Source: Heteronotia binoei (taxonomy: Eukaryota). Taken from it: a stretch of DNA of 64,000 nt. Shown piece by piece: positions 1-46,770 of this stretch. The number at the start of each line of letters is the position of its first letter. Position 1 is the stretch's first letter. The translations under genes were made by a program, and so were the position numbers. The notes beneath the pieces are model-generated. The model was given only the letters and a program-made list of their open reading frames with translations. It did no database searches and was not told the DNA's origin. The stretch is from contig NC_083227.1 in the NCBI RefSeq assembly GCF_032191835.1, forward strand, positions 41,540,001 to 41,604,000, written 5' to 3'.

Positions 1-119
1 CATTGCCACACATTAAGCCTCTGTTAAAGGGACAAGGCTTTTTTCTCCAAGCCTGTTAGCAATCCTATGGGCAGAAGAAATGTATAAGAGCAGCAGACCG
101 GGAAGAGAACAGGAAGGGG

Positions 120-2332
120 CTAGTTTATCAAGGAAGAGGCCTGGGCCCCAGAAGGGGCAGGCGAGGGGAAGGACGGATGTTGGAAGCCTCGGGAGGTGAA
201 AGGCAGGGCCCAGGGTAGATCCAGGGAAGGGATGGGGAGGGAGGAGGGAGAAGGAGGGAAGGAAGACAGGGTGGGGAGGGGGCCTGGTGAACCGAAGGAG
301 GCAGAGAAGGCTGAGGCAGGGAGAGGAGCAGCAGGCTTGGGGGTGCCAGCAGCCAGCAGCGAAGCAGGGGCTGTGCCAGTGCCAGCAGAGGCCTTGTCGT
401 TGCTATGGGTGCGCTGGTGGCGGTTGAGGTGGGAGCTGCGGCTGAAGCATTTGCCACAGATGCTGCATTTGTAGGGCTTCTCCCCGGTGTGGGTGCGCTG
501 GTGGATGGTGAGCTCCGAGCGCTGGATGAAGGCTTTGCCACAGTCCCCGCAAGCATAGGGCTTCTCACCCAGGTGGATGCGCTGGTGTTTGATGAGGTTA
601 GAGCTGACGCTGAAGCACTTGCCGCAGGCATCGCAGCGGTACGGCTTCTCGCCAGTGTGCATGCGCCGGTGCTTGGTGAGGTCAGACTTCTGGATGAAGC
701 CCTTTCCACAGTCGGCGCACTTGTAGGGCTTCTCACCCAAGTGGGTGCGCTGGTGCTTCAGCAGGTTGGAACGCACGCTGAAACTTTTGCCGCACTCGTT
801 GCACTTGTAGGGCTTCTCGCCAGTGTGCATGCGCCGGTGTTTGGCCAGTGCCGAGTTCTGGGCAAAGCACTTGCCGCAGTCTATACAAGAGTAGGGCTTC
901 TCACCTGTCTGAGTTCCTTGGTGCCGCACGCCCTCCCCCCCGCCCCTCCCGCACTCACTGCAAGCCGGGCGCCGCCAGAGGAAACTCTTGCCGCAGTCAC
1001 TGCACTTGCAGGGCAGCAAGGTCCCACGCCGGCGTTTTCGCCGCCCGCCCAAGAAACCACAGTCCATGCAACGACAGGGCAGGTGCTCAGCACTCCTGTG
1101 CACCCGCTGGTGCCGCTCCAAGTGGGAGCTCTGTGAGAAGCCCTTACCACAGTCATCGCAGTGGTAGGGCTTGTCACCAGCATGGATGCGCTGGTGCCGG
1201 TCCAGGTGGGAACTCCAAGCAAAGCTCTTCCCACAGTCACTGCAGGTGTAGGGCTTGGCAGAGCCATCGGGGTGGCGGGTGCGCCGGTGCTGAAGCAGGG
1301 CACCGTTCAGCCCAAAGCTCTTGCCACAGTCTTCGCAGACATAGGGTTTCTCTGCAGCGTGGTGCGCACGCCGGTGCTTGGACAGCGCCGCGTTCTTGTT
1401 AAACCCTTTCCCGCAGTCACCACACTGGTAGGGTTTGGTGCTGGCTTTGCTTGCTGGTGTGGTTGTGGAAGCCAGGCAGCACTTGCAAGGAGAAGCCTGG
1501 ATGCTGCCAAAGTGGATGCGCCGGTGGCGGTCGAGGTGAGAACTCCAAGCAAAAGCACGGCCGCAATCCTCACAGACGTAGGGCTTCTCACCGGTGTGGA
1601 TGCGCCGGTGGCGCTCTAAGTGCGAGTTCCAGTTGAAGCCCTTGCCGCACTCGGTGCATTTGTAGGGCTTCTCTTCCAAGTGCTGCTTTTGGTGTTTGAT
1701 GAGGTGGGCAGGAAGGCCAAAGCTCTTGCCACAGACATTGCACTCGCAGGGCCGAGCTGGGCTCGCACTCGTCTTCTTGCCCACGTGACTGCGTTGGTGC
1801 TGGATGAAGGCCGAGCCAACGCTGAAGCTCTTGCCGCACTCGGCGCAGCGGTAGGGCTTGGTGCTGGTGTGGCGCCGCTGGTGGGTCACGAGGGTGGAGT
1901 TGAGGCGGAAGCACTTTCCGCACTCATTGCACTTGTAAGGCTTCTCCAGGCCGCTGCCACTGTGCAGCCGTGAGCGCTTGCCAAAGCCAAAGCCCTTCCC
2001 GCAATCGAGGCATCGCCCGGCATGGCTGAGCAGCCCGTGGTGGCCTCGTGGGGAGAACTTCTTGAAGCCACGGTGAGCAATGGGCTTGCTGGCCTGTTTC
2101 TTCCCCAAGGACTTCTTTGGCTGCTCCTTCAGGGCTGCCTGGCCCTGGCTTTCATTGCTGGCCTTCTCCTTCGACTTCTCCTGCAGAAGGTCCTGTTGGG
2201 TGTCTACTTTCTCCACTGCAATGTTCTCCCCACCGTCTTCTTCTCCTCCTCCATCCTGTGGTGTTGCCACCGCCTCCTCCTCCTCCTCTTCCTCCTCCTC
2301 ATTCCCATTGTTACTCATCATCCCATCATCTG
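120..2332 (-). CDS. ZNF-A terminal exon: acidic N-terminal region, 15 intact C2H2 fingers plus degenerate fingers, and a 94-aa Pro/Ser-rich tail
   Basis: The ORF 120..2321 has CxxC...HxxxH repeats with TGEKPY linkers. The frame stays open to a phase-1 acceptor (minus strand ttctctcattgttccag|CA GAT GAT GGG ATG) at 2332. Stop TAG at 120-122. Confidence 0.95.
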
Positions 2333-2896
2333 CTGGAACAATGAGAGAATCCAGTAACTCCTGTGGTCTGGGAAAGGAAACTTGGAAGAAGGGAATTGAA
2401 AAAGGCTGTCATGCGTTCATAGACCTGGCATCACAACTCATCATTCCTCCCCACCAACAATCTGCTGATTCTTATCAAGCCCACACCCTCCCACACCTCT
2501 GCCCACCACAGCCTGCCTTCAAAGTACCCCTGACATTCTCTGCTCAGTCAGGGAGGGAGGCGCCATGTCTCAGGTTCAATCCCCAGCATCTCCAGTTTAA
2601 CGGATCAAGTCACAGGTGATGCAGAAGACTTTTGTCTGACACCCTGGAAAGTGGCTGCCAGTCTAAGTAGACAATACTGATCTTGATAAACCAACAGTCT
2701 GACCTAGTATAAGGCAGCTTCATGTGTTTTCTGCATTTCCCATTTCCTGCCCCTTTGGAGAAAAAAAATTCAAAGAGTTTGAACCCAGGTACAAGTCACA
2801 AATAATTTGTCATGCCCACAGCAGCTTCCTCAGTTTCCCATTGGTAAAAAGGCCTGAGCCACCACATCAGATGTATTCTAGTTTCTCCCATGTGGT

Positions 2897-3150
2897 TAGT
2901 TTGGTGTAGTGGTTAAGTGTGCAAACTCTTATCTGGGAGAACCGGGTTTGATTCCCCACTCCTCCACTTGCAGCTGCTGGAATGGCCTTGGGTTAGCCAT
3001 AGCTCTGGCAGAGGTTGTCTTTGAAAGGGCAGCTGCTGTGAGAGCTCTCTCAGCCCCACCCACCTCACAGGGTGTCTGTTGTAGGGGGAGAAGATATAGG
3101 AGATTCGGAGAGAAGGGCGGGGTATAAATCTGCAGTTTTCTTCTTCTTTT
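2897..3150 (+). mobile_element. tRNA-derived SINE of the gecko type; related copies at about 6408-6690 (+), 18400-18580 (3' part), 19915-20162 (-), 22478-22735 (+)
   Basis: Head tttggtgtagtggttaag...gggtttgattcccc (A/B boxes), shared body, tail ending ataaatc(ttc)n. Confidence 0.8.
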
Positions 3151-4952: not shown

Positions 4953-5027
4953 TAGGTGCCAGTCCTCTTCTCCGGTGAGATTCGGCAAAAGCAGTTATCC
5001 GGGGCCAGCTGATTGCAATTTCCTCTG
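4953..5027 (-). CDS. ZNF-A 75-nt internal exon encoding (A)EEIAISWPRITAFAESHRRRGLAP(T)
   Basis: Acceptor ccatccatag|CA and donor CCT A|gtaagt give a symmetric phase 1-1 exon with an open frame. The peptide is identical over 23 aa to the exon at 39268-39342. Confidence 0.9.
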
Positions 5028-7100: not shown

Positions 7101-7331
7101 ATCTCTACCAATGGTCCATCTTCTCCAGCATCCTGTCTCACACAGAGGCCAACCAGTTCCTTTGTACGGCCAACAACAGGACATAGAGGCCAAGACTTTC
7201 CCTTGATGTTTCCTCCTGGATCTGGGATTTAGAGGATGTGGAGGTTCCCCTCAGTCGCTATAGTTAGTAGCCATTGACAGACCTCTCCAAGAATCTATCT
7301 AATCCCATTTTAAAGCTGTTTATTCCTGTGG
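7101..7331 (-). mobile_element. Old CR1 LINE 3' end, interrupted by the 7332-10598 insertion
   Basis: CR1 3'UTR-like sequence on the minus strand that continues seamlessly at 10599 (ttattcc-tgtgg-acatc). Confidence 0.75.
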
Positions 7332-7597
7332 TAGGGTGGCCAGACCGTCCCGGTCTCCCGGGACATTCCCGGATCTGGCCACCCAATCCCGGATCCCGGG
7401 CTGCCTATACCGGGACCATTAAAGGTCCCGGTTTAGGCAGCCCCGGAGCCGGTGGGCCGCGGGCGCGGGCGGGGAAGGCGGGGAGTGAGGGAGGGAGCGT
7501 CCCTGCGCCTGCGCAGGGCCCCTGCGCACGCGCAGGGACGCTCCCACCCTCACTCCCCGCCTTCCCCGCCCGCGCGCGGGGCCCGGCGGCAGTGGTG

Positions 7598-8270
7598 GAG
7601 GCCTCTCCGTGGCCTCCGCTGGTCGCTGGAAGCCCTCCAGAGACTCTGGAGGGCCTCCAGCGACCAGCGGAGGCCGCGGAGAGGCCGCGGGGCACCCGGC
7701 GCTGGTCCCGGAAGGCCTTCCAGAGCCTCTGGAAGGCCTTCGGGGACCAGCGCCGGCCAGCGAAGGCTTCCCCGCGGCCTCCGCTGGTCCCTGGAGGCCC
7801 TCCAGAGTCTCTGGAGGGCCTCCAGGGACCAGCGGAGGCCGCGGGGAAGCCGCGGGGCACCCGGCGCTGGTCCCGGAAGGCCTTCCAGAGGCTCTGGAAG
7901 GCCTTCCGGGACCAGCGCCGGCCAGCGAAGGCTTCCCCGCGGCCTCCGCTGGTCCCTGGAGGCCCTCCAGAGTCTCTGGAGGGCCTCCAGGGACCAGCGG
8001 AGGCCGCGGGGAAGCCGCGGGGCACCCGGCGCTGGTCCCGGAAGGCCTTCCAGAGCCTCTGGAAGGCCTTCGGGGACCAGCGCCGGCCAGCGAAGGCTTC
8101 CCCGCGGCCTCCGCTGGTCCCTGGAGGCCCTCCAGAGTCTCTGGAGGGCCTCCAGGGACCAGCGGAGGCCGCGGAGCAGCCGGCGCTGGTCCCTGGAGGC
8201 CTCCAGAGGCCAGCGCCGGTAGCGGAGAGGCCCGGCGCTGGTCCCTGGAGGCCTCCAGAGGCCAGCCCCG
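7598..8270. repeat. GC-rich 165-bp tandem repeat (about 3.5 copies); each unit has two palindromes
   Basis: gaaggcttcc recurs at 7762, 7927 and 8092. Confidence 0.9.
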
Positions 8271-8372
8271 GCAGCTCCCTCCCTCCCTCGCCGCGAGGCC
8301 GCCGCCCGAGGACTCCCCGCCGCCGCCGCCGCTGGATCCGCCGCCCTGGAATAAGGTAAGGGGGCCGAAAGC

Positions 8373-8823
8373 NNNNNNNNNNNNNNNNNNNNNNNNNNNN
8401 NNNNNNNNNNNNNNNNNNNNNNNNNNNNNNNNNNNNNNNNNNNNNNNNNNNNNNNNNNNNNNNNNNNNNNNNNNNNNNNNNNNNNNNNNNNNNNNNNNNN
8501 NNNNNNNNNNNNNNNNNNNNNNNNNNNNNNNNNNNNNNNNNNNNNNNNNNNNNNNNNNNNNNNNNNNNNNNNNNNNNNNNNNNNNNNNNNNNNNNNNNNN
8601 NNNNNNNNNNNNNNNNNNNNNNNNNNNNNNNNNNNNNNNNNNNNNNNNNNNNNNNNNNNNNNNNNNNNNNNNNNNNNNNNNNNNNNNNNNNNNNNNNNNN
8701 NNNNNNNNNNNNNNNNNNNNNNNNNNNNNNNNNNNNNNNNNNNNNNNNNNNNNNNNNNNNNNNNNNNNNNNNNNNNNNNNNNNNNNNNNNNNNNNNNNNN
8801 NNNNNNNNNNNNNNNNNNNNNNN
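8373..8823. other. Assembly gap (451 N)
   Basis: Run of n. Confidence 1.
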
Positions 8824-8824
8824 C

Positions 8825-9351
8825 GCAGAGTGTTGGACTGGATGGGCCACTGGCCTGATCCAACAGGGCTTCTCTTATGTTCTTATGTGACGCAGAGTGT
8901 TGGACTGGATGGGCCACTGGCCTGATCCAACAGGGCTTCTCTTATGTTGTTATGTGATGCAGAGTGTTGGACTGGATGGGCCACTGGCCTGATCCAACAG
9001 GGCTTCTCTTATGTTGTTATGTGATGCAGAGTGTTGGACTGGATGGGCCACTGGCCTGATCCAACAGGGCTTCTCTTATGTTGTTATGTGATGCAGAGTG
9101 TTGGACTGGATGGGCCACTGGCCTGATCCAACAGGGCTTCTCTTATGTTGTTATGTGATGCAGAGTGTTGGACTGGATGGGCCACTGGCCTGATCCAACA
9201 GGGCTTCTCTTATGTTGTTATGTGATGCAGAGTGTTGGACTGGATGGGCCACTGGCCTGATCCAACAGGGCTTCTCTTATGTTATTATGTGACGCAGAGT
9301 GTTGGACTGGAGGGGCCACTGGCCTGATCCAACAGGGCTTCTCTTATGTGA
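8825..9351 (+). repeat. 67-bp tandem array (8 visible units) of the CR1 3' terminus
   Basis: Units start at 8825, 8892, 8959, 9026, 9093, 9160, 9227 and 9294 and match the CR1 tail at about 24765-24830. Confidence 0.92.
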
Positions 9352-9420
9352 CAATACTGACTTTGGTGGACCCAAGCACTGATTCAGTGTAAGGGAGCTT
9401 TGTGTTTGTGTCTTCTAGTG

Positions 9421-10328
9421 CAATTTTGTTCTCAGATCCTGTATTTACTTCATCAGTATATGGGATAAGGCACTTTCTCAACTGTGCTGCATAATGCAGC
9501 CTATTTATTTTGTCCTGTTGGCTCTGTTGGCTCTATCTGCGCCACCTTCATCACTTTCGGGGTGTGGATCCCCCAGTGGAGTGGTCTCCCGACTCCCTCC
9601 GCCGGCTGTTTCTGATAGCCCTGCGCCCCCTCTTTCATTTGATATGTGTCCCGTGCGGGTGCCACCCTCCCGCCGGGAGATGCCGCAAAATGAGCCCCCT
9701 TGAGGCTTATGGCGGCAGGGCTCGGGGGAAGCGAGCTAGACTGCTGTTCTTTTGAGGGGTTATAGAGTGTTTCGAGCCCGTCCCTGTGGCATCGGTCCCA
9801 TCATTGTGGGGCCCAGGGGGCCGGCGCAGCGGCACGCTGAAGCAGCCTGTCGGTCACTTCCAGGTTCCTGTCCTGCATCTTGACCGGTGTTATTAGTGAC
9901 AGGCTGCTTCGGCGTGCCGCTGCGCCGGCCCCCTTGGTCCCACAACGATGGGACCGATGCCACAGGGACGGGCTCGAAACACTCTATAACCCCTCAAAAG
10001 AACAGCAGTCTAGCTCGCTTCCCCCGAGCCCTGCCGCCATAAGCCTCAAGGGGGCTCATTTTGCGGCATCTCCCGGCGGGAGGGTGGCACCCGCACGGGA
10101 CACATATCAAATGAAAGAGGGGGCGCAGGGCTATCAGAAACAGTCAGCGGAGGGAGTCGGGAGACCACCCCACTGGGGGATCCACACCCCGAAAGTGATG
10201 AAGGTGGCGCAGATAGAGCCAACAGAGCCAACAGGACAAAATAAATAGGCTGCATTATGCAGCACAGTTGAGAAAGTGCCTTATCCCATATACTGATGGA
10301 GTATATACAGGATTTGAGAACAAAATTG
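9421..10328. repeat. 908-bp palindrome: 431-bp arms (9421-9851 and 9898-10328), 46-nt loop
   Basis: The arms are reverse complements with about 10 mismatches counted by eye. Confidence 0.95.
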
Positions 10329-10598
10329 TTTCCGGCGGTGATATTTGGGGGATTTTTGGGGACGTCACAGGAAGTGCTGTGAAGTCACTTCCTGTTTCCG
10401 GCAGGTGACGCGGGGGAAATGATGTCACAGGAAGTGATGCCACTTCCTGTTTCCGGTGGTGGCATGACATCACCGGAAGTGACGTCACCGGAAGTGACGT
10501 CACTTCCTGTTTCCGGCGGCGCGAGCGCTTTGCGCGCGCGCAACCCCCCCCCCCCCCCCAGTGTCCCTGGCTGGCCTTCAGACATTATGGTCACCCTA

Positions 10599-11350
10599 TG
10601 TGGACATCATCACTACATCTTCTGGCAGCAAATCCCACATTTTAATCACTCTCTGTATTTCCTTTTGTCAGACCTGAACATATTGTCCATCAGTTTCTTT
10701 GGATGCCCTCGAGGTCTAGTGTTTTGGGAGAGGGAGTAAAATTTCTCTTTGTCAACTCTCTCCATCTCGTGTATAATTTTATAAACTTCTACCATGTTTC
10801 CCCTTTATTGACTCTTTTTTAAATTGAAAAGTCCCAGACACTTCAGCCTTTCCTCATAGGGAAGGTGCTCCAAACCCCTAATAACCTTGATTTCCCTCCT
10901 CTGCACTTTTTCCAGCTCTGCAACGTCCTTTTTGAGACACAAGGACACAGTATTCCAAATGAGGTCACAACATAGATCTATACAGGGGCATTACACAATA
11001 TTCGCCATTTTATTCCCTAGCTCTTTTCTAATAATCCCTAACCTAGAGTTTGTCTTTTTTCACAGCTGCAGCACACTATCCGCTATGACTTCAAGATCTT
11101 TCCCCCTCTCAGTCTCGGCAAGTTCAGACCCCATTAGCCTAAGCTTGAAGTTGGGATTTTTTGCCCCAATATATATTACCACGCTCACCAACACTGAACT
11201 TCATTTGCCACAGTGTCGCCCACTCGTGCAGTTTGTGGAGATCCTCTTAGAGCAGTCAGTCTTGGTTTTCACCATCCTGAATCATGTTGTGTCATCTGCA
11301 AACCTGGCTACTCAACTACTCACCCCTAGTTTCAGATCACTGAGGAATAG
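10599..11350 (-). mobile_element. Degenerate CR1 ORF2 3' remnant (continuation of 7101-7331)
   Basis: Minus strand resembles CR1 reverse-transcriptase C-terminal sequence, with frameshifts. Confidence 0.75.
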
Positions 11351-11613
11351 AATATAGGGCTGACAATCCCCAGTTGGGGGCAGGGGATCCCCTGGTTTGG
11401 AGGCCCTCCTGTCGCTTCAGGGCTATCAGCAAGCGGGCGGGGGGGGGGGGGAGGAAAATGTTCCACAGCCACTTCATTATTCCCTATGGAGACCAGTTCT
11501 TTTTGTATAAGGTTGTACTCTGTGATTCTCTACCATGAGGTGCCTCAATAACAGCAGAGGGAAGGAACCTAACAAGCTGTATGTGCTTTATAAAAAATAA
11601 CAGCAGCCCTTAC

Positions 11614-11687
11614 CCAAAGAGATCACATTCTCATAATTTTCCTGCATGTCGTCGCTGGGATCCAGAAGAGTCCACACGCTGCTATGC
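11614..11687 (-). CDS. ZNF-A KRAB-A-derived exon (HSSVWTLLDPSDD-MQENYENVISL); probable start ATG at 11647
   Basis: Acceptor ccttttcctccag|G and donor TTG G|gtaagg. WTLLDPS and MQENYENVISL match the KRAB-A consensus, with the QRALY-type segment missing. Confidence 0.85.
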
Positions 11688-13724
11688 CTGGAGGAAAAGG
11701 CACAATCACCCACATTCTTGCGGGTTGCATTCATTCTTGCAATAACAAGTGCCACCTTATTACCCTTCTGCCATAATCACATTGGTAATAGCCACGCCCA
11801 ACTCCAGGGATATTGCCAGTTTCTCTAAATTGTTTCCATGCTCTTCACTCAACAATGATCTCTATTAGAACTGGAAAGCCAATAACTTATATTGGAAGGC
11901 CAGCATACATTATGCAATTTAACAACAAAAAAATCTAACCACTGCAGCAAATTAAGCAGGATATTTACAAATTCCAATAAGTTAGGCAAATATGACCTGC
12001 TGGCTTATAAGGTTGCCAACCTCCAGGTGGGGGCTGGAGATCTCCCAGAATTACAAGGGATCTCCAGACTACAGAGATAAATTCCCCTGGAGAAAATGGC
12101 TGTTTTGGAGGGTGGGCTTTATGGTATTCTACCCAGTTGAGGTTCCTGCCTTCCCCAAACTCTGTCCTCCCCTCAGTTCCATCCCCAAATTTCCAGGAAT
12201 TTCCAGACCTGGAGCTGGCAACTGTACTGACTTGTCCTTCTGCTAGTTCTGGTCACACAGTCTTCAGAATGAGCCTTGAGTTCCGTTGAAACAGTGAGAA
12301 CAAAAGCCCAGCCTTTCATCATTTACTTACATAGTACAATTCTTTCCCCACCCTTCCACCAAGGAGCTCAGGGAAGTGTACACAGTTCTTTACCCTCCTT
12401 TTTTTATCCTCACAACGACCCTGTGAAGTAGGTGAAGCTGAGAGAGAGCAACTGCCCTATGTTTATCCAGAAAGCTTCACAGTAGGGTGGGGATTTGAAC
12501 TTGGGTCTGCCAGATTGTACTCTGGCACTCTAACCACTGTACCACCTCAGCTATCCAGCCGTAAGCCTTCTACCTCATAAAGGAGGTAAAAAAAGGGGGG
12601 GGGGGATCTGTTTTTGAGGGGATGCCTAAGTTGCATCAAGGGATTAAGAGGATGCCCACGCTCACAAATGATATGCAGGGATTCATCCATCTGGGACAAG
12701 TCTCAAGACTTCTTGGCTGACTCAAAGCCATGCAAAAAACAAAACAAAAAACACCACACCATGATGTACAAATTATGTTTTTACTCCCAACTGCACATTC
12801 AAAAAGAACACTCCTATACTCCACCTTTGTGTTTATAACCCCTAAGGACAGGGCTGGTGCTAGGCTTTCTGGTGCCCTAGGCAAGTTACCCACTAGCGCC
12901 CTCCCCCCTCATTATTAAAAAATAGGGAAAATGAAGATGGCCAAACTTGAAGCTTTTCACATTTTTAATTTACTGATTTTTAATTTTAATTTTTCACAAA
13001 AATGTGATAAGTTATAAAAAACTGTGAGAATAAGTACTTGCCGGCCATGCCAGGAAGGAGGGTGGCAAGACAGGATGAGGTGGGAGGCCAAGTCACACAT
13101 CAGGGAGAGGGTGGTGGCTTGGCTTTGTTGAGGACAACTTGGTAGTGGGGGAGGACGAGGTGACAGCGGTCAGCAGCGTTGGGGAGGGAGCACCCAGCAG
13201 TGACCCCTAGGCCGGGTGGCACCCTAGACAAATGCCTACTTTGCCTATTCCCAGGCACCGGCCCTGCTTAAGGATCTTAAAGTTGTGGAGAGAAGATATC
13301 CTATTAAAAGAGAAGGGGCACTAGAATTAAGGGGATTGTAATGATTTTAGATTCATGAACCCAGGCTGAAATACACAGATGTGATGGTGCTGGTGATGGA
13401 AGATCACAGCTAGGGGTGCCAACCTCTAAGTGGAGTCTGGAGGTGTCCTAGAACTACAACTGATCTCCAGATGACATAGAACAGTTTCATGGAGGAAATA
13501 ACACCTTTGGAGGCCAGACTCTACGGGACTGCATCCCTGTGTGCTGAGTTCCCTCTCCAGTCTCCACCCCCCAAATATCCCGGAATTTCCCAACCCAAAG
13601 TGGCAACCCTAACTCACAGCACATGCCTAAGACCCTAACTTCAGTCCTGGCATCACCACTTCATGAATCTCAGGCAGCAAGGCCGCCCTCTGACTGAAAC
13701 TTTGAGAAGCAGTTTGGTGTAGTG

Positions 13725-14448
13725 CAGGGGAGTTGAACTCATTTGTTAGGAGAGCCAGATATGACATAAATGAGACCTTGTTGGGCCAGGCCATGTTGGG
13801 TTGGGCTGGGCCATGTGTGTACCTATTTAAGATTAGGTAGCAGCAGGGCTTTTTATGTAGAAAAGGCCCAGCAGGAACTCATGTGCATATTAAGCCATAC
13901 CCCTTGACACCAAGGCAGCCAGAACTGCGTGCCTGTGCGTTCCTGCTCAAAAAAAGCCCTGGGTAGCAGTGATATAAACTTTATAAAGGACACAGACAAA
14001 CGCAATTTTATATATAAAAAATGCTTAAAACGTTAGCACTCGTTGGTCTTAAAGGTGCTTTCTTTGCACTTCTCCCATGGGATCCAGGGAAATGGGCAAA
14101 GGAAGCTCTCTTTCCTTCCTTCCTCAGGAGATTAGGGGGGAGTCCCACCCAATAGAAGGAAGATAGGCTTGGCTCAGTAGCTCTGCTCTGCAATTGAGAG
14201 AGCCTGGAAAAACAAGCTCTGCCTCCCCCCCCCCGCTCCCCAAGGGAGGAGCCTCAGCCAATGGAGAAAATAAAGGTTTTGCTCTGTAGCTCCTGTGCAA
14301 TTGAGCAAGTCTTGCAAAGCAAGCTGTTATGCAGAAGGAAGCAAGATATAGGGAGAAGGAAGCAGATTATAGCCAGTTGCTTGGGGGCCTGATAGGAGTC
14401 CTCCATTCGGCTCCCGAACCGCATGTTTGACACCCCTGGCACGGTTAG
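13725..14448. mobile_element. hAT MITE (caggggtgtcaaactcattt family) with a nested cagggctttt MITE at about 13842-13961; relatives at 21819-22440, 25018-25953, 33260-33490, 56768-56880
   Basis: cagggg...cccctg termini and shared internal sequence among copies. Confidence 0.75.
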
Positions 14449-14751
14449 GGCGCAAGATTCGCATCTGAGGTCACCCCCGCCTCCAATTCAGGTTCCTACT
14501 CAGAGCTCACAGCTTTTCCTTGCAGGTTGCAATCTCTCAGCCTAACCTACCTGGCAAGGTTGTTGTGAGACTGATACCGTAAATTACCCCGAGATCCTTG
14601 GAAGAAAGGAGAGGTATGCAGATGTGAGAAATAAAACGCACTCGAGAGGCTGGGAGCGAGAGTGGGGGTGCATACCGCCCCACAGAAGGGGATGAAGTCA
14701 GATTTAAGGGCAGCCCCTCGCTTCGGTCTTGCAAGCGTCGTTTCGCCTTAC

Positions 14752-14830
14752 CCTCTTTCCCTGCTCGCAAGGTAGTCTTGGTTCTTGAATTACTGTTCCA
14801 TAGTGGGGTGTGTTTGCTTCTCCGGGAGCG
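14752..14830 (-). other. Candidate non-coding first exon of ZNF-A (5' boundary unknown)
   Basis: Minus-strand donor GAAAGAGG|gtaagg at 14752/14751 lies inside the CpG island. The frame continuous with the next exon has an upstream TAA (after a short ATG GAA CAG TAA uORF), consistent with 5'UTR. Confidence 0.5.
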
Positions 14831-15299
14831 GCATCTCTTCTCGATCCCGGGCGTGTCAACGTGTAGGGAGAGGGAGGCTAGAAAGCCGAACGCGATCCTG
14901 AGTCGCTCGCTTTCCTTCCTCCCCTTCCCAACATTTTCTCTCTTTCTCGCGCTCTCTGCAGCTTCTCGGTTACCTGGTGCTTCCGGTTCAAGAGTGAATG
15001 GATTGTGCCTGCGAAATCCGGAGACTCCTCTGGTGATTTATTAATTTTTAAGATTATTTTTAGCGATCAGTCCGAAAAAAAGAGAAAGAAAGAAAGCCAT
15101 AGGTTGCCGACCGGCTTGGTATTGAAAGGACACAGGAAGGGGCCGGAGGAAGCTGCTGGTGGTTGGGATTTGATGCTGAGAGGCGAGGAGGGGGAGGCAG
15201 GAAGGCGGGGAGGAGGTCTGGGGGGCGGAGGATCATAAAGAATAGAGAGCGAAGAGATCAGAAACCGTGGTGGTGGGAAGGGGGTGTCTCCCTGCCTTT

Positions 15300-15520
15300 C
15301 AACGGCGAAGAGACTCAAGCTGCCTCCATTGCGGATTGCAACTGGGGGAGTCCCCCTCCCGGCGACAGAAGACTGGAGGGATCCTATGCAAAGGGGCAGA
15401 CGGCCTTTCAGAAAGACCTCGAGCCGGGCAAGGACTTTCTCATTGTTTGGATAGGAGCAGCTTCCCCCCAGAGCCCCCGGCAATCCGCAGATCTGGTTGC
15501 TCCTGAGCCGAAGAAACCAG
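15300..15520 (+). other. Candidate upstream exon of ZNF-B (5' boundary unknown; probably 5'UTR or N-terminal extension)
   Basis: Donor AAACCAG|gtaaac at 15520/15521 is phase-compatible with the 18007 acceptor. The frame is open from 15163 but contains no in-frame ATG. Confidence 0.55.
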
Positions 15521-16196
15521 GTAAACGCCTTGAAGAGGAGCTCTGTAAATGGACTGGAAAGTCACCCCTGTACGGAAAATAAAAAGAGACGATCCGTGCT
15601 GGAAAGGATCGGGAACGGGTGGGGGGAGGAGTGAGCTCCCGAACCGCTGCTTCTATTGACACATGACCTTGTTAAACTCCTGCAAGGGACAGGTTCAGTT
15701 ACCTTGTCAAATAGCGTAATGGCCCAGCCAGCCCTGGGGTTTCTCTGGTCTTTAAAACTTTGAGGTTTGCAAAAAGAGGGGGAGAGGAGAGCTAGCAATT
15801 GCCCTCCAGGCCAATTCTTTGCCTAGCCGAAGCTCCTTTGTGCGGTGGTTCCCAGCCTGCTTGAATCCACATACACTTCTCAGACTTTGATTTGAAAAGT
15901 CTCCAGAAAATGTATTCTGCTTTTGTTGTTGTTGTTGTTGTTGTTCTAGAGGTTTTAAAATGTATAGTGTTCCTGCTGATCTGGATCTGACATTTGGTCC
16001 TGTAAATTGAAGAATGCTGGACTTTGAAATATATATATTTTTAAAAAGAAAGGAAACCATTACAGCCCCACTTGGCTGAATAACCATGTTCACAACCTTC
16101 TTCCTGGATGGCTTTGAACAACTGGCTTGGGTTTTTCCCACTCTACAAAGTGGGAATGGTAGGGATCTGTATCTCAGTTTGTGTTGAGTCACGTAA

Positions 16197-18006: not shown

Positions 18007-18135
18007 GACCTGTCCTCGGCAAGGAACTGGGTTGGTGTCAGATCATGGAGGATGAGTGGCTAGTTGTTGATCCTAACCAGAAGCCTATCTACAGGGAAAC
18101 TCACCAAGAGCCTTGTGAAAGTCTGGTGGCACTCA
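18007..18135 (+). CDS. ZNF-B divergent KRAB-A exon (GPVLGKELGWCQI-MEDEWLVVDPNQKPIYRETHQEPCESLVAL); candidate start ATG at 18045
   Basis: Acceptor cctcttgtttcag|GA, donor CTC A|gtaagt, 129 nt, phase 1-1. EDEWLVVDPNQKPIYRE...ESLVAL aligns with KRAB-A EEWALLDPSQKALYRD...SLVSL. The ATG has good Kozak context (atcATGG). Confidence 0.8.
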
Positions 18136-23012: not shown

Positions 23013-23117
23013 GATCTTCAAGTTCTGAATCCAATGAGATTTTCCTTGTGGAAGATGATGAAGAACCTTGCATCCCAGAGCCCGGAAGAAGGGAGAACCC
23101 AAGAAGAGCCAATATGG
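23013..23117 (+). CDS. ZNF-B KRAB-B-like exon (SSSSESNEIFLVEDDEEPCIPEPGRRENPRRANM)
   Basis: Polypyrimidine acceptor ttctccaagcag|GA, donor ATG G|gtgagg, 105 nt, phase 1-1. LVEDDEEPCIPE resembles KRAB-B LEQGEEPWxPD. Confidence 0.75.
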
Positions 23118-23649
23118 GTGAGGAGCAGATCTCAGCTGTTTAGGCCAAGAATGCTAGAGAGGTGTAGAGGTCAGAGCATCAGACTAGGAAGACCTGCATT
23201 CAGATCCTCACTCAGCCATGCAAATCATTGGCTGACTAACAGGCAGAAGGCTGTTTGGCCCCTGAGAGGTAGAACAGCCACTCAGCTGTTTCACACCTGA
23301 ACCAATGGGAGTGCTGCTCTAGCATCCAGTCTTCTTTCAGAAGGGTGATGGGATGTTGGAGCACAGCAACTGGAAGTTGAGGGCTGCCTGAGGGATCATT
23401 TAGACAGAGAAGTCTTATAGCAAGGGAGCAGGCAATTTCCTGCATAGCTCTGCCTGGTAGTGCAGCAGACTGGTTTAACTCAATCTCTGGGTGAGGATAG
23501 AGTTGTGAAGCCTGGCTCTGGTGATGAATAGACCTGATAACTACAAGCTTTAAAAAGAATTGACCACATACTCTGTATATTGATAAATCTTCTTTGTTGT
23601 TTTATAAACCTCCCGCTTTGGTAATCTCTGTACCCTTCAGGCTCAAAGT

Positions 23650-33300: not shown

Positions 33301-34154
33301 AGAGTGCTAATCTTTTAAGCATATTTTAAGTTTTTTAAAAAAATCTTCAATTGTGTTTGTTTGTGTCCTTATTTTGAAGTTCACATCTCTGCTAGCTGGC
33401 ATCACATTTTATGGCACACATGGCCCGGCCCAACAAGGTCTCATTTATGTCAGATCTGGCCCTCATAACAAATGAGTTTGATATCCCTGATCTGGATCTT
33501 TTATGAGTCAAGTAAAATGGATGGGGACCTGCCTGGGTATTACTTTGTACCCAGTCCTATAGCCCAGTGCACAGAAGGAGATCATAGACAACATGGTATT
33601 TTGTAATCAGTTGTATAGTTCCCAGACTGTTAGGCATGAAGGCAGCAACTCCATTCAGGTACCATCCTACAAATTCCCAATTTATTTAAGTTATTTTCAT
33701 GTAGAAAGTGAAGCTGAATTACAAAATTATAAAAGAGGAAGTCCCCCCTCCACTAAATATATTATGTACAATGACCAATGGAATACAACTGAGTTACACA
33801 AATTAAAAGATGAAGGTACCAAGGGGACAAAAACTTCCATGGTTAGGCACCTCACCTCTCCTATCCCAGAGAGTACTTTCCTATTAGTAGCACAGAAGAA
33901 ATTCATCATGATAGGTCTGTTTTTCCATAGGTTTACATCAATCAATAGTTGCTTAGGAAAGTCTTTCTTGATCCTGTACAAGTAGCATCCCTCCAATCAA
34001 AATCACTTTAGCTGAGCTAATAGTGAGCGCTTTCATTTTCTGTCATCTCCTCCAGTTGCTGGGCGTGCAAATTAGAATCTCTTTAAGCCCATAAGCGACA
34101 GAGCTAGTGAATATACCAGAACATGAGGTTGTTGTGCTTTGGTCACATCATGTG

Positions 34155-35439: not shown

Positions 35440-36000
35440 TTTTGACGGCCCAGCGCGGCTGTCTGCCGGCCGCCAGCGTCCATGAGGCTGCCGGGGATGC
35501 TTTATGGATGGAGTAGGAAATTCCGGGAAGCCAGCAGAGGGCCCTGGCTGCGGCTGATCAGCCAAGGGGGCTTTGCTGTCTTTCCCCTGCTTCTTTCTGC
35601 CGGCTGCATCCGGGGTTGAGCTTCCTGGGTCAGAAAGCTGCTGCTGAATCCATAGGGACCCGGGCGTCCCCCGCCCCCTACAGAGCAGCCGCCGATGCCC
35701 CCAAGGGAACGCCGCTCCGCACCAGGGGTCTCCCGCGCCCGGCCGTGGTGGGGGACCGGATCCGGCTGGGAACCCCCCGCACTGGCCCGCCCCGGGTGAG
35801 GAGGAGGAGGCGGCGGCGGCGGCGGCAACCCCGGGGTCTCAAACTATTAACCCGGGAGCAGCCGGAAACGCCAGGGATTTGAAAGAGAAGGGTAAATAAA
35901 AGAACTCAATCCATTATCTCAAAAGGGGGGAAGACTTCATCCCCCTGGAAGAATCAGCAGAAAGGGACGGATCAAGGCTGCCGCCTCCGGCAAACTCACC
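35440..36000 (+). promoter_or_regulatory. CpG island; probable promoter and first exon of ZNF-C (candidate donor at 35891/35892)
   Basis: GC/CpG-rich block upstream of the ZNF-C exons, with donor-like GAAAGAGAAGG|gtaaat. Confidence 0.65.
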
Positions 36001-38071: not shown

Positions 38072-38199
38072 TTCTGCCACGTGGTTCAGAGTCGAGGACG
38101 CTTGTCATTTCACAAGTCAGCAACTTTACAGAAGTACTTTTGTGCATCTCCCTGAGAGTGACATCATGCAAGAGAACTATGAGAATGTGATCTCATTGG
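38072..38199 (+). CDS. ZNF-C KRAB-A-derived exon; probable start ATG at 38166 (MQENYENVISL)
   Basis: Acceptor ctctctctgcag|T and donor TTG G|gtaaga. The 128-nt length is close to the usual 127-nt KRAB-A exon, but only the last 11 codons keep the KRAB consensus. Confidence 0.85.
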
Positions 38200-39267: not shown

Positions 39268-39342
39268 CGGAGGAGATTGCAATCAGCTGGCCCAGGATAA
39301 CTGCTTTTGCTGAGTCCCACAGAAGGAGAGGTCTGATGTCTG
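39268..39342 (+). CDS. ZNF-C 75-nt exon encoding (A)EEIAISWPRITAFAESHRRRGLMS(D)
   Basis: Acceptor gcatcctcag|CG, donor TCT G|gtaagt, phase 1-1; paralog of 4953-5027. Confidence 0.9.
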
Positions 39343-40863: not shown

Positions 40864-41094
40864 ACACGGAGCCTGAACAAGGCCCAGTGGAACAGGCCCC
40901 CATGCAGGACCCAGTTGTGGCGGGTCCAAGTGAAGGTGGAATAAACGCTGATCTGCGGCGGCAGCTGGGCCTCATCCTGCAGACTGCTGGCAGGAGCCAG
41001 GTGGAGAAGATGCTGCGGGAGCTGGTGAAAGAACAGAGCCAGGATGGGAAGCGCAGACCTCGGAAGAAGGTGCTCAGGAGCCCCAAAAACGAAG
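40864..41094 (+). CDS. ZNF-C-specific 231-nt exon (DTEPEQGPVEQ...LRRQLGLILQTAGRSQVEKMLRELVKEQSQDGKRRPRKK...)
   Basis: Acceptor ttctgtggtgcag|AC, donor GAA G|gtgggc, symmetric phase 1-1, open frame with coding-like GC content in an AT-rich intron. Confidence 0.7.
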
Positions 41095-44857: not shown

Positions 44858-46770
44858 TTACAGTTGCTGACGAGAACGAAGAAGAGCTACAGGCAGAAGA
44901 GGACAGCTCAGCGAAGGTGGAGCCACCAGGTACCCAACTAGGGACATCTGATGGCCAGGGTGAGGGTAACACCAATGACAGCCAAGGCCACCTCAGCTCA
45001 GAAGAACACCAGCTGCTACAGGTGCCGACTGTACATCAGAGGGAGAGGAAGACATCCAGAAAGCTAAAAGACCAGCCTGCAGCTCCAGCTGCAGCAGAAA
45101 GACCAGGGGTCTGCATAGAGTGTGGGAAGAAGAACTTGGGTGGTAGTGGGCGAGGCCACAGTGAACCCACACCGGACAGACCGCATCAGTGTGCCGAGTG
45201 TGGACGTTGCTTCCGGCAGCGCTCCATCTTGGCTAAACACCAAAAGATCCACACAGGCGAGAAACCCTATCCGTGCACGGCCTGTGGCAAACGGTTCAAC
45301 CGTAGCTCCAACCTGGCACAACACCAGCGTGTGCACACAGGGGAGCGCCCCTTCCCCTGTGCTGCCTGCGGCAAGGCCTTCACCCAAAAATCAGACCTGG
45401 AGCGGCATCAGCGCGTGCACACAGGGGAACGGCCATACTCCTGCCAAGACTGTGGCAAGCGCTTCTCTGTCAGCTCCCACCTTGACCGGCACAGACGCAC
45501 GCACCAACACAATCCCCAAGAAGAACCCCCTGCTGCTGCCCCAGCCCCATCTGCTCACTGCTGCCCCGACTGTGGGAAGTGTTTTGGCCAGCGCTCGGCA
45601 CTCTCCAAGCACCGTAAGACTCATTCCGGTGAGCGCCCTTTCCCATGCAGTGCCTGTGGCAAGCGTTTCAGTCGCAGCTCCAACTTGGCACAGCACCAGC
45701 GTATTCACACTGGCGAGCGCCCATTCCCCTGTAGCGACTGTGGCAAACGGTTCATCCAGCGCTCTGACCTGGAACGCCACCAGCGTGTGCACACTGGTGA
45801 GCGCCCCTACACCTGCGCTCAGTGCGGCCGGGGCTTCTCAGTGAGTTCTCATCTTGACCGGCACCAGAGAGTCCACCAAGCCCAGGCTGCTGCAGCTGCC
45901 GCACACCGCTGCCCCGAGCATGTGAAGGGCTTCCTCCTCAGCACTGGGGGCAAACAGCTTCTCAAACACCAGCTGTACAGCAGCAAGGGGCGCCTCACGC
46001 GCAGCGGCCACTGCTTGGACTGCGGCAAGAGCCTGGGCAAAGTCCCGCTGCAGTTGCCGGCGCCCCCTGTTGAGAAGCCTTTCAAGTGCCAGGACTGTGG
46101 GAAAGCTTTTGCCCAGCGGTCGGCCTTGGTTAAGCACCAGCGCATCCACACAGGGGAGAAGCCGTTCTCCTGCATGGACTGTGGCAAGGCGTTCATTCAG
46201 AAATCAGACTTGACCATCCACCAGCGCATGCACACCGGCGAGAAGCCGTACCGCTGTGACACCTGCGGCAAGTGCTTCAGTGTCAGCTCCAACTTGCTGA
46301 CTCACCAGCGCACCCACTTGGGCGAGAAGCCCTACGCGTGCGGGGACTGCGGCAAGGCCTTCATCCAGCGCTCAGAGCTCACCATCCACCAGCGCACCCA
46401 CACCGGGGAGAAGCCCTACAAGTGCAGCATCTGCGGTAAATGCTTCAGCCGCAGCTCCCACCTCAACCGCCACCAGCGCACCCATAGCAACGACAAGGCC
46501 TCTGCCGGCACTGGCCTGGCCCCTGCTTCGCTGCTGACTGTCGGCACCCCCAAACCTGTCGCTTCTCTTTCCGCTTCATCCTTCTCTGCTTCCTACCCCT
46601 CACCCAACCCTCTTCCAACCTTGCCTTCCTTCCCCTCCTCTCCATCATCCCTCCCCATCCCTTCCTTGGACCTGCCCTGGTCTCTCGCCTTTCCATCCCG
46701 GGGCTTTTCTCATCCATCTTTCGCTTCTCCTGCTCCAGGCAGTGCTCAGACTTCATCCCTAATAAACTAG
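44858..46770 (+). CDS. ZNF-C terminal exon, 13 intact C2H2 fingers plus a 94-aa Pro/Ser-rich tail paralogous to ZNF-A
   Basis: ORF 44917..46770 extends in frame to the acceptor catctcag|TT ACA at 44858. Stop TAG at 46768-46770. Confidence 0.95.

What the first reader, a model, noticed from the sequence alone, without database searches (positions are those of the whole stretch)
11614..11687. Truncated KRAB-A: both paralogs appear to start at the internal Met of the VMxENY motif
Seen: similarity between ZNF-A and ZNF-C starts exactly at the ATG (11647 minus; 38166 plus). Upstream, A keeps only WTLLDPS with the QRALY segment deleted and C has drifted (FRVEDACHFTSQQLYRSTFVHLPES). Both acceptors are phase 2 rather than the usual phase 0, and the likely first exon of A has a stop and no ATG in this frame. 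Established: TRIM28/KAP1 binding needs the N-terminal DV-containing part and the MLE-containing part of KRAB-A together. Inference: most of the KRAB exon became 5'UTR and an 11-residue stub was reused in a new N-terminal module, converting a repressor into something else.
Basis: partly seen in the sequence, partly recalled or inferred. Interest (0 to 1): 0.78.

Follow-up and report, generated by a model that had tools for sequence, protein, structure and literature searches.

The report
Zinc-finger genes starting inside KRAB relic
Two gecko zinc-finger genes start translation at a methionine inside what was once a KRAB repressor-domain exon; the same shortened start is shared by a gene family found across turtles, crocodilians, birds and lizards, so it is an old, conserved remodelling and not a recent accident.

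Summary
The window is Heteronotia binoei (gecko). In that mRNA an in-frame stop lies 27 codons upstream of ATG 11647, with no ATG between them.

ZNF-C is the annotated XP_060095255.1, whose CDS starts at ATG 38166. Upstream of the ATG, gecko and iguanian orthologues differ by frame-breaking indels and show no codon periodicity. Downstream of it, every change is synonymous.

Pfam KRAB matches only profile positions 29-42, but three things support KRAB-A ancestry:
- the donor phase is the KRAB-A phase;
- C's exon is 128 nt long;
- an in-frame W-x-L-L-D-P relic sits in A's leader.

The event is not specific to these two paralogues. Turtle, crocodilian, bird and squamate gene models of a small sauropsid-only family all begin MQE(N/S)YE(N/S/T)VISL-AEEIAISWPRITAF. 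A-type and C-type genes both occur in birds, so the truncation is ancient and already sits in public gene models.

Loss of TRIM28 recruitment is inferred, not tested. This scan already met the family on this same window (s1-318577). Interest is moderate.

The parts
11614..11687 (-). ZNF-A exon 2 (74 nt), the shortened relic of a KRAB-A exon: 40-nt leader plus 34 nt coding
   Evidence: Sequence. The X2 RNA contig joins 11686/7 to 14751/2 and ends at donor 11614. Pfam KRAB matches profile positions 29-42 only.
11614..11647 (-). Start codon (11647-11645) and coding part MQENYENVISL plus the first base of an Ala codon
   Evidence: In-frame stop upstream in the mRNA. Across 10 sauropsid sequences, 7 carry only synonymous changes against ZNF-C; the other 3 carry 1-2 replacements (E3D, N4S, N7S).
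11654..11674 (-). In-frame WTLLDPS relic of the KRAB-A middle (E-E-W-x-L-L-D-P), now in the 5' leader
   Evidence: The motif occurs only twice in 128,000 six-frame codons. It has decayed to GTFLNSS in the agamid orthologue.
14752..15101 (-). ZNF-A exon 1 (minimum extent), non-coding, in a CpG island; donor GG|gtaagg
   Evidence: X1 contig 14751-15101 and X2 contig 14751-14956 joined to exon 2. CpG o/e 0.6-0.8. Four short uORFs and an in-frame stop.
4953..5027 (-). ZNF-A exon 3 (75 nt), AEEIAISWPRITAFAESHRRRGLAP
   Evidence: This exon is the subject of earlier finding s1-318577.
120..2332 (-). ZNF-A zinc-finger exon. The acceptor ttccag|CA at 2332 is inferred. The predicted protein is 773 aa.
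   Evidence: The only phase-1 acceptor that keeps the frame. It matches the penguin A-type junction GLVS-DDGLL.
38072..38199 (+). ZNF-C KRAB-A relic exon (128 nt if the acceptor is at 38072); ATG at 38166
   Evidence: The CDS of XP_060095255.1 is reproduced exactly by 38166-38199 | 39268-39342 | 40864-41094 | 44864-46770. The acceptor is not verified by RNA.
35695..35891 (+). ZNF-C exon 1 (part): conserved uATG at 35695 opening a 34-codon uORF; inferred donor AAGG|gtaaat at 35891
   Evidence: The CpG island spans 35250-36250.
39268..39342 (+). ZNF-C 75-nt exon
40864..41094 (+). ZNF-C exon 4 (DTEPEQG...QVEKMLRELVKEQ... helical hairpin), absent from ZNF-A
44864..46770 (+). ZNF-C zinc-finger exon
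18007..18135 (+). Neighbouring ZNF-B KRAB-A exon (129 nt) with its own internal start at 18045 (MEDEWLVVDPNQKPIYRETHQEPCESLVAL)
   Evidence: Pfam KRAB E 8.2e-5, profile positions 13-41. The Phrynosoma orthologue's N-terminus (P0070) matches the solved ZFP568 KRAB at E 1.3e-4.

Best explanation
The 74-nt exon is the second exon of ZNF-A, an expressed gecko C2H2 zinc-finger gene. I found no annotated protein for it in the searches I ran. The exon is what remains of an ancestral KRAB-A exon.

Transcription starts in a CpG island that ZNF-A shares head-to-head with ZNF-B. Exon 1 is non-coding and carries short uORFs and an in-frame stop. Exon 2 contributes 40 nt of leader and then the AUG, which is the conserved Met of the KRAB-A 'V-M-L-E-N-Y' motif.

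Only the last 11 KRAB-A residues, MQENYENVISL, are translated. They correspond to the C-terminal half of KRAB-A helix alpha-3. They run without a break into a 25-residue segment from a 75-nt exon, forming a predicted N-terminal helical module.

The same architecture begins ZNF-C and every member of a small gene family restricted to turtles, crocodilians, birds and squamates. The capture of the internal start therefore happened once, before those lineages split. The former upstream coding sequence has since decayed as leader, leaving different vestiges in different genes: W-x-L-L-D-P in gecko A, and WF/Y-x-V-E-D-x-C-x-F in squamate C.

The protein lacks KRAB-A helices alpha-1 and alpha-2 and the first half of alpha-3. 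It therefore most likely cannot recruit TRIM28 in the canonical way, and uses the conserved new module for another contact. That last step is inference.
For: Transcript structure (shown):
- In that mRNA a stop lies 27 codons upstream of the ATG, in frame, with no ATG between.

ZNF-C (shown):
- The window is 100% identical to the Heteronotia binoei assembly.
- The RefSeq CDS of C starts at 38166 and is reproduced exactly.
- The exon 1 ATG opens a 34-codon uORF that ends in TGA, and its frame is not conserved among geckos.

Constraint starts at the ATG (shown):
- Among five squamate C orthologues the 94-nt leader has 46 variable sites spread 14/18/14 over codon positions, with indels of 7 and 1 nt.
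- The 34 coding nt have 5 variable sites, all synonymous.
- Between gecko and agamid A, the leader is 65% identical and the coding part 91%.
- In-frame stops lie directly upstream in budgerigar, Sphaerodactylus, alligator and penguin.

Family-wide (shown):
- More than 20 models start MQE(N/S)YE(N/S/T)VISLAEEIAISW.
- An exhaustive profile search finds only 26 clusters. Every one I traced to a source is sauropsid, including a turtle and penguins; one weak hit (P0081, E 3.6e-4) looks unrelated.
- A-type genes, which lack exon 4, occur in penguin and Cariama.

KRAB ancestry (shown):
- Pfam KRAB matches profile positions 29-42 at E 7.9e-4.
- The donor is phase 1 after S-L, and C's exon is 128 nt.
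- The W-x-L-L-D-P motif is otherwise unique to B's KRAB exon.
- The neighbouring gene B has a recognisable KRAB-A and KRAB-B.
- Sphaerodactylus paralogue P0080 has the stub, then the 75-nt-exon peptide, then a KRAB-B-like GFPLSKPDLLSWMDRGEDLW.

Module (predicted): in the AlphaFold2 model, helix 2-17 crosses the exon junction, with pLDDT 95 for residues 11-20.

Published work:
- KAP1 contacts involve the whole KRAB-A box, residues 3-44, with helices alpha-1, alpha-2 and alpha-3 (PMC9753469).
- F9, L20 and V27 are needed for function in addition to MLE (PMC8835667).
Against: - The RNA evidence is assembled contigs from small runs, not raw reads. The joining contig comes from a close relative (3 differences in 73 nt) in a run only guessed to be RNA. 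The same-species contig shows only 9 unplaced letters beyond the donor.
- No TSS, ribosome-profiling or peptide data exist.
- C's exon 1 donor and exon 2 acceptor are inferred.
- Pfam KRAB scores 19.4 bits, just under the gathering threshold of 20.4, and the upstream parts alone give no hit.
- An intact W-x-L-L-D-P, and V-E-D kept through synonymous changes between gecko and iguanians, are more than one would naively expect after more than 250 My of neutral decay. Part of the upstream sequence may have stayed coding longer in squamates, or it may be constrained as RNA.
- Non-AUG initiation upstream is not excluded.
- I found no annotated ZNF-A protein in public sets.
Confidence: 0.82

Rival explanations
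1. The full (if divergent) KRAB-A is still translated, either from an upstream in-frame start in another first exon or by retention of the sequence upstream of the acceptor. In A the genomic frame stays open back to an in-frame ATG: MNATRKNVGDCAFSSRHSSVWTLLDPSDDMQENY.
For: - The genomic reading frame upstream of A's acceptor is open for 42 codons and contains an ATG.
- The frame is also open upstream in Anolis and Phrynosoma C.
- Sphaerodactylus RefSeq isoforms X1 and X2 extend the CDS into exon 1.
Against: - The RNA contig uses the acceptor at 11687, and the spliced leader has an in-frame stop.
- 42 open codons are expected by chance about 13% of the time.
- The agamid orthologue has a stop in that stretch.
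- The Sphaerodactylus exon 1 ORF is broken by a stop in Heteronotia and by a 1-nt deletion in Eublepharis, and its donor GT is GA in both.
- Variable sites upstream show no codon periodicity.
- Most models, including well-supported Anolis ones, start at MQENY.
Confidence: 0.06
2. The resemblance to KRAB-A is coincidental. The exon is the first coding exon of an unrelated N-terminal domain and was never a KRAB box.
For: - Only 14 residues match the Pfam model, below the gathering threshold.
- The upstream parts alone give no hit.
- phmmer against solved KRAB chains finds nothing for A or C.
Against: - KRAB is the only Pfam family hit at E < 1e-3.
- The intron sits at the KRAB-A position and phase (after S-L-G, phase 1).
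- C's exon length of 128 nt matches the canonical 127 nt (my own knowledge, not tested here).
- W-x-L-L-D-P lies in frame at the right place and is otherwise unique to B's KRAB.
- V-E-D-x-C-x-F sits at the exon start in squamate C.
- A paralogue carries a KRAB-B-like box after the 75-nt exon.
- The adjacent paralogue B has a significant KRAB-A and KRAB-B.
Confidence: 0.04
3. The internal start was captured independently in the A, C and 'MQESYETV' lineages, or a long and a short isoform coexisted for a long time. The conserved Met of V-M-L-E-N-Y is a ready-made fallback start, so the upstream part stopped being translated in squamates more recently than the family's origin.
For: - The intact W-x-L-L-D-P in gecko A differs from the agamid by single-base changes.
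- V-E-D is kept by synonymous changes (GAG/GAA, GAC/GAT, GTC/GTG) between geckos and iguanians.
- Neighbour B has an independent internal start at a different KRAB-A position.
Against: - All traced members in four sauropsid orders start at the same Met and share the 75-nt exon, so a single event is more parsimonious.
- Birds and crocodilians show no relic upstream.
- There is no periodicity in the squamate leader overall.
- Slow neutral decay plus splice-site and leader constraint could explain the vestiges.
Confidence: 0.15
4. ZNF-A is a decaying duplicate (pseudogene), so where it 'starts' has no biological meaning.
For: No annotated ZNF-A protein was returned for this genome. RNA support is thin.
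Against: - The spliced ORF is an intact 773 codons with about 15 fingers.
- Exon 1-exon 2 splicing is seen in two runs.
- Orthologues exist in Sphaerodactylus (P0074) and an agamid, and the A-type occurs in birds.
- The coding part of exon 2 is 91% identical to the agamid's, against 65% for the leader.
Confidence: 0.05

Closest known systems
Canonical (modern) KRAB zinc-finger proteins: KRAB-A/B plus a C2H2 array, recruiting TRIM28/KAP1
   Same: - Same gene layout: small 5' exons, then one large zinc-finger exon.
- The exon occupies the KRAB-A position, with the same phase-1 donor after S-L-G.
- The sequence D-x-M-Q-E-N-Y-E-N-V-I-S-L matches KRAB-A profile positions 29-42.
- Relics of W-x-L-L-D-P and V-E-D lie upstream.
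   Different: - Only the last 11 KRAB-A residues are translated.
- Helices alpha-1 and alpha-2 and half of alpha-3 are missing, as are the DV, F9, L20 and V27 positions.
- The M of 'MLE' is the initiator, and L is Q.
- A conserved 25-residue exon replaces or precedes KRAB-B.
- The Pfam score is below the gathering threshold.
Variant or ancestral KRAB domains that do not bind KAP1 (PRDM9/SSX aKRAB; the ZNF282/ZNF777/ZNF746 cluster with DUF3669)
   Same: These are KRAB-derived N-termini, conserved across amniotes, that have left the canonical TRIM28 pathway (PMC8835667, PMC6923878, PMC3971581).
   Different: Those keep a full-length, divergent A box. Here the box is cut to a stub by relocation of the start codon and joined to a new exon. 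No DUF3669 is present, and the family is sauropsid-only.
ZNF-B in the same window (and its Phrynosoma and Phrynocephalus orthologues)
   Same: It is the adjacent paralogue and shares the CpG-island promoter with A. Its KRAB-A exon (129 nt) also has an internal start codon.
   Different: B starts at KRAB-A profile position 13 (MEDEW...). It keeps alpha-2, alpha-3 and a KRAB-B-like exon, passes the Pfam threshold, and lacks the 75-nt exon.
Lizard KRAB consensus described by Liu et al. 2014 (PMC3971581)
   Same: That paper notes that the lizard KRAB consensus lacks the central Leu of MLE, which fits M-Q-E here.
   Different: The paper treats full KRAB-A domains found by HMM. It does not describe this truncated family.

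Membership tests
KRAB zinc-finger protein (Pfam PF01352 KRAB box) | Whole KRAB-A box recognised at or above Pfam's gathering score | tested here: not met
   19.4 bits against a cut-off of 20.4, and only profile positions 29-42 of 42 are aligned. This includes the untranslated D-D/D-I and the read-through G. The mature N-terminus of the C orthologue (P0035 1-60) scores 12.5 bits, E 0.12.
KRAB zinc-finger protein (Pfam PF01352 KRAB box) | Translated N-terminal half of KRAB-A (V-x-F-x-D-V, E-E-W-x-L-L-D-x-x-Q-R-x-L-Y-R) | tested here: not met
   An in-frame stop with no AUG after it lies in A's spliced leader. Orthologues show frame-breaking indels and no codon periodicity upstream.
KRAB zinc-finger protein (Pfam PF01352 KRAB box) | KRAB-A exon position and phase-1 donor after S-L-G, upstream of a single large C2H2 exon | tested here: met
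   Donors are TTG G|gt at 11614 and 38199. The C2H2 arrays score E 1e-85. The canonical 127-nt exon with phases 0/1 is my own knowledge and was not tested here.
KRAB zinc-finger protein (Pfam PF01352 KRAB box) | Binding of TRIM28/KAP1 and KAP1-dependent repression | not testable with these tools
   Only inference is possible. The published interface uses KRAB-A residues 3-44 and needs F9, L20, V27 and MLE.
Sauropsid 'MQENYENVISL-AEEIAISWPRITAF' zinc-finger family (unnamed; earlier finding s1-318577) | Protein begins M-Q-E-(N/S)-Y-E-x-V-I-S-L, encoded by the last 34 nt of a short exon | tested here: met
   A and C are both MQENYENVISL. Ten sequences from geckos, iguanians, an agamid, budgerigar, penguin and alligator were compared.
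Sauropsid 'MQENYENVISL-AEEIAISWPRITAF' zinc-finger family (unnamed; earlier finding s1-318577) | Followed by the 75-nt exon A-E-E-I-A-I-S-W-P-R-I-T-A-F-A-E-S-H-R-R-R-G-L | tested here: met
   The exons lie at 5027-4953 (A) and 39268-39342 (C).
Sauropsid 'MQENYENVISL-AEEIAISWPRITAF' zinc-finger family (unnamed; earlier finding s1-318577) | Second conserved helical hairpin D-L-R-R-Q-L-G-x-I-L-Q-T-x-G-x-x-Q-V-E-K-M-L-R-E-L-V-K-E-Q (C-type and 'MQESYETV' type only) | tested here: met
   Present in C (40864-41094). Absent from A, as in the bird A-type proteins P0073 and P0033.

The most novel reading that the evidence does not exclude
The stub plus the 75-nt exon form a new effector domain, found across sauropsids and independent of TRIM28. 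It was built by exapting the last three turns of the KRAB-A alpha-3 helix, and these zinc-finger proteins use it to recruit a different cofactor or to self-associate. In addition, three neighbouring genes (A, B, C) record repeated 'start-codon slippage' into KRAB-A as a route by which KRAB zinc-finger genes leave the KAP1 pathway.
Probability: 0.4. Interest if true: 0.65.

Novelty: new variant of a known kind. Interest (0 to 1): 0.45.

Why it matters
KRAB zinc-finger genes are the largest family of tetrapod transcription factors. Nearly everything known about their effector domain comes from mammals.

Here a clean natural experiment is preserved across turtles, crocodilians, birds and squamates. 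The start codon moved to the conserved Met of V-M-L-E-N-Y, about 70% of KRAB-A became leader, and the remaining 11 residues were welded to a new exon that is almost invariant between birds and geckos.

If the module has its own partner, it would define a new repressor or activator domain for sauropsid biology, and possibly for synthetic biology. It also shows that HMM-based censuses of 'KRAB' versus 'ZNF-only' genes in birds and reptiles misfile KRAB-derived genes.

For annotation, it supports the MQENY start and argues against the extended Sphaerodactylus X1/X2 models. It also points to a ZNF-A gene for which I found no annotated protein in Heteronotia.

Tried and rejected
- phmmer of the A and C exon translations against all PDB chains gave nothing relevant. 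P0080 also gave nothing.
- Pfam on the upstream (leader) translations alone, for A, C and Anolis, gave no hit. The upstream relics therefore rest on motif-level evidence and the empirical motif count.
- The Rfam gathering scan of 9400-15700 gave nothing.
- ESM Atlas feature search with the N-terminal module gave scores of 0.79-0.80, which are uninformative. One weak KRAB cluster appeared.
- Paper searches for the peptide strings found no paper.
- The look-up of encoding contigs failed for P0001, P0003 and P0074. I therefore could not read the A leader in a second gecko.
- The Phrynosoma locus shows no A-type stub; gaps are present.
- The RNA runs offered hold only 5-8% of the probe words. Reads were laid on A (9600-15599), so C's 5' exon junctions remain inferred.
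- I first took the A/C BLAST block 12118-12014 / 35211-35315 for exon 1. It is very deeply covered in all four runs with many broken joints, so it behaves like a repeat and is not exon 1.
- I considered an ancestral phase-0 acceptor at aag|AAT (about 11716) being in use. The RNA contig shows it is not.
- A fold search of the AF2 model was not run, because its pTM of 0.26 is too low to give meaningful matches.
The N run 8373-8823 was left untouched.

Full report
**What the window is.** Window 34000-47000 is 100% identical to Heteronotia binoei assembly GCA_032191835.1, CM063329.1. Three C2H2 zinc-finger genes lie in the first 47 kb:
- ZNF-A on the minus strand, with its zinc-finger exon ending at 120.
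- ZNF-B on the plus strand, with zinc fingers from 26399.
- ZNF-C on the plus strand, with its zinc-finger exon at 44864-46770.

ZNF-C is RefSeq XP_060095255.1 (P0036, 748 aa). Joining 38166-38199 | 39268-39342 | 40864-41094 | 44864-46770 reproduces that protein exactly. I found no annotated protein for A.

**Checking the observation.** On the minus strand the A exon reads ccttttcctccag|GCATAGCAGCGTGTGGACTCTTCTGGATCCCAGCGACGAC ATG CAG GAA AAT TAT GAG AAT GTG ATC TCT TTG G|gtaagg. It spans 11687-11614 and is 74 nt long. In the ATG frame the leader reads (G)HSSVWTLLDPSDD and the coding part MQENYENVISL.

C reads ...ctctctgcag|TTCTGCC...GAGAGTGACATC ATG CAA GAG AAC TAT GAG AAT GTG ATC TCA TTG G|gtaaga. 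Its in-frame leader is SATWFRVEDACHFTSQQLYRSTFVHLPESDI.

BLASTN between the two genes aligns 11656-11609 with 38157-38204 at 85% identity. Similarity therefore begins 9 nt before the ATG and ends 5 nt into the intron. The only other A/C exon-level matches are the 75-nt exon and the zinc-finger exon.

- In run X2, from a close relative, one 464-nt contig lies on 11614-11686 (record positions 186-258) and continues without a break on 14751-14956 (record positions 259-462). It skips 3064 nt bounded by gt...ag on the minus strand.
- In run X1, which is near-identical to the window, a 359-nt contig covers 14751-15101 and has 9 further letters beyond the donor.
- Exon 1 lies in a CpG island (o/e 0.6-0.8) and spans at least 15101-14752.

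In the spliced mRNA the ATG frame reads ...MPLPEKQTHPTMEQ* FKNQDYLASRERGHSSVWTLLDPSDD-MQENY. A stop lies 27 codons upstream and no AUG follows it. Four upstream AUGs open uORFs of 3-19 codons.

These are assembled contigs, not raw reads, and X2 is only guessed to be RNA. The canonical splice sites at both ends make a spliced RNA the natural reading.

**The 5' end of C.** Sphaerodactylus RefSeq isoforms X1 and X2 extend the CDS into a GC-rich exon 1 (MPPRGRPSAPG...) by using an acceptor 11 nt before the ATG. Three observations count against that extension being real coding sequence:
- In Heteronotia the same ATG (35695) opens a 34-codon uORF that ends in TGA.
- Eublepharis has a 1-nt deletion in it.
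- The Sphaerodactylus donor GT is GA in both other geckos.

I tested the most likely Heteronotia donor (AAGG|gtaaat, 35891) with each of three candidate acceptors (38072, 38090, 38157). In every case the frame upstream of 38166 has a stop and no later AUG. C's junctions remain inferred.

**Where constraint begins.**
- Heteronotia C against Sphaerodactylus and Eublepharis: the leader part of the exon is 84-85% identical with indels of 7 and 1 nt. The 34 coding nt are 100% and 94% identical.
- Across five squamate C orthologues, the 94-nt leader has 46 variable sites spread 14/18/14 over codon positions, which shows no periodicity. The coding part has five variable sites, all synonymous.
- Gecko A against the agamid Phrynocephalus A orthologue (same acceptor, same 40-nt leader length): 65% identity in the leader and 91% in the coding part. 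WTLLDPS has decayed to GTFLNSS by single-base changes.
- In-frame stops lie just upstream of the Met in budgerigar, Sphaerodactylus, alligator and penguin.
- Across ten sauropsid sequences the 11 codons carry only synonymous changes, apart from E3D, N4S and N7S.

**It is a family trait.** A word search with the N-terminal region, and then an exhaustive profile search of 1.84 billion cluster representatives, found only 26 clusters. Every cluster I traced to a source is sauropsid: many squamates, Alligator, Struthio, Melopsittacus, Nestor, Cariama, Spheniscus, Aptenodytes, and the turtle Platysternon. One weak hit (P0081, E 3.6e-4) looks unrelated.

Almost all full models begin MQE(N/S)YE(N/S/T)VISLAEEIAISWPRITAF. 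The ostrich has V in place of the Met and starts three codons earlier.

Penguin P0073 and Cariama P0033 are A-type. In them the stub and the 75-nt exon run straight into the acidic linker, as in my 773-aa prediction for Heteronotia A with an acceptor at 2332. A and C are therefore ancient paralogues, and the internal start predates the split between birds and lizards.

The N-terminal 120 residues are 73% identical on average across the family.

**Is it really KRAB-A?**
- Pfam KRAB is the only family hit for the exon translations. It scores E 7.9e-4 and 19.4 bits, just under the cut-off of 20.4, and aligns profile positions 29-42 only.
- The donor is in the KRAB-A place and phase.
- C's exon is 128 nt. 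The canonical 127 nt is my own knowledge.
- W-x-[LIVM][LIVM]-D-P occurs twice in about 128,000 six-frame codons of the window: in B's KRAB exon, and in frame in A's leader.
- Squamate C leaders keep W-F/Y-x-V/L-E-D-x-C-x-F at the exon start, which recalls V-T-F-E-D-V-A-V-x-F.
- ZNF-B, which shares A's CpG island, has a 129-nt exon. That exon scores as KRAB over profile positions 13-41 (E 8.2e-5). The N-terminus of its Phrynosoma orthologue aligns to the solved ZFP568 and ZNF93 KRAB A+B chains.
- Sphaerodactylus P0080 carries the stub, then the 75-nt-exon peptide, then a KRAB-B-like GFPLSKPDLLSWMDRGEDLW.

The upstream parts alone give no Pfam hit.

**How it most likely works.** The following steps are shown:
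- a bidirectional CpG-island promoter;
- a non-coding exon 1 with uORFs;
- a 74-nt exon 2 with the AUG in a GACGACAUGC context.

The following steps are predicted. Residues 2-17 form one helix across the exon junction (pLDDT 95 for residues 11-20). A second helix covers residues 19-31. C-type proteins have a further hairpin at residues 64-97.

The following step is inferred. The solved KRAB-KAP1 complex uses KRAB-A residues 3-44 as a U-shaped unit of three helices (PMC9753469). F9, L20, V27 and MLE are all required (PMC8835667). A protein that begins at the M of MLE cannot form that interface. Its highly conserved new module presumably serves another contact.

**What remains odd.** Two vestiges are better preserved than simple neutral decay since the sauropsid ancestor would suggest:
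- the intact W-x-L-L-D-P in gecko A;
- V-E-D maintained through synonymous differences between geckos and iguanians.

Slow squamate substitution rates, constraint from splice sites and the leader, or a later or parallel loss of upstream translation are all possible. I give the last of these about 15%.

**Novelty.**
- The structure is real, and I found no paper describing it.
- It is already implicit in public gene models.
- This scan already described it on this same window (s1-318577).
- It is a new variant of the known KRAB zinc-finger kind.
- Its function is untested.

Noticed in passing
window 18007-18135 (+), 23012-23122 (+), 26399-27928 (+): ZNF-B also has a KRAB-A exon (129 nt) with an internal start at 18045 (MEDEWLVVDPNQKPIYRETHQEPCESLVAL; Pfam KRAB profile positions 13-41), followed by a KRAB-B-like exon. 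It lacks the V-x-F-x-D-V part. The frame is open through exon 1 back to 15163 but holds no AUG. Phrynosoma has a stop 4 codons before the Met. This is a second, independent N-terminal truncation of KRAB-A in the same cluster. I found no annotated gecko protein for it.
   Followed up: partly
window 14752-15520: A and B are transcribed head-to-head from one CpG island. A's exon 1 ends at 14752 on the minus strand and reaches at least 15101. B's exon 1 spans at most 15230 to 15520 on the plus strand, with donor CCAG|gtaaac, and is carried by a 3448-nt contig in run X2. A 53-nt element at 15096-15148 is 83-89% conserved in the agamid and phrynosomatid loci.
   Followed up: partly
window 9863-10600: A second CpG island lies inside A's intron 2. 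In run X1 it is covered by short contigs at far higher depth (about 80-3000) than A's exon 1 (3.3). There is no Rfam hit and no obvious ORF. It could be an independent transcript, an alternative promoter of A that would skip the stub exon, or DNA carry-over.
   Followed up: partly
window 35695-35799; L001 and L003 homologues: The uATG of C's exon 1 and its first ~10 codons (ATGCCCCCAAGGG...) are conserved in three geckos, although the downstream frame is not. This may be a regulatory uORF. In Sphaerodactylus it is fused to the main ORF in RefSeq isoforms X1 and X2, which is probably an over-extension.
   Followed up: partly
window 12007-12123, 13400-14400: The A/C BLAST block 12118-12014 / 35211-35315 and the stretch 13600-14400 are covered at very high depth, with many broken joints, in all four runs. 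They behave as interspersed repeats, not exons.
   Followed up: no
window 7274-8360 and 8826-9405; N run 8373-8823: A's intron 2 holds a GC-rich tandem array that is open in several frames. It also holds eight or more copies of a 67-nt tandem repeat, one copy of which lies upstream of C at 35081-35145. The two arrays are separated by an assembly gap, which was left untouched.
   Followed up: no
P0080 (Sphaerodactylus townsendi, UniRef A0ACB8EGU8): This further paralogue has a divergent stub (MQGNYETLISL), a 24-residue version of the 75-nt-exon peptide, and then a KRAB-B-like box. This suggests the 75-nt exon was inserted between KRAB-A and KRAB-B and did not derive from KRAB-B.
   Followed up: partly
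P0031, P0032 (Podarcis, Zootoca) and P0033 (Cariama): Gene models fuse the MQENYDNVISLAEEIAISWPRITAF N-terminus to Tigger transposase-derived or GABA-B receptor sequences. These are either read-through mis-annotations or real exon captures of the module.
   Followed up: no
window 52012-59934; L001, L002, L003, L009: An acyltransferase (AGPAT-like) gene follows ZNF-C in Heteronotia, Eublepharis, Sphaerodactylus and Phrynosoma, so the cluster's synteny is conserved across squamates.
   Followed up: no
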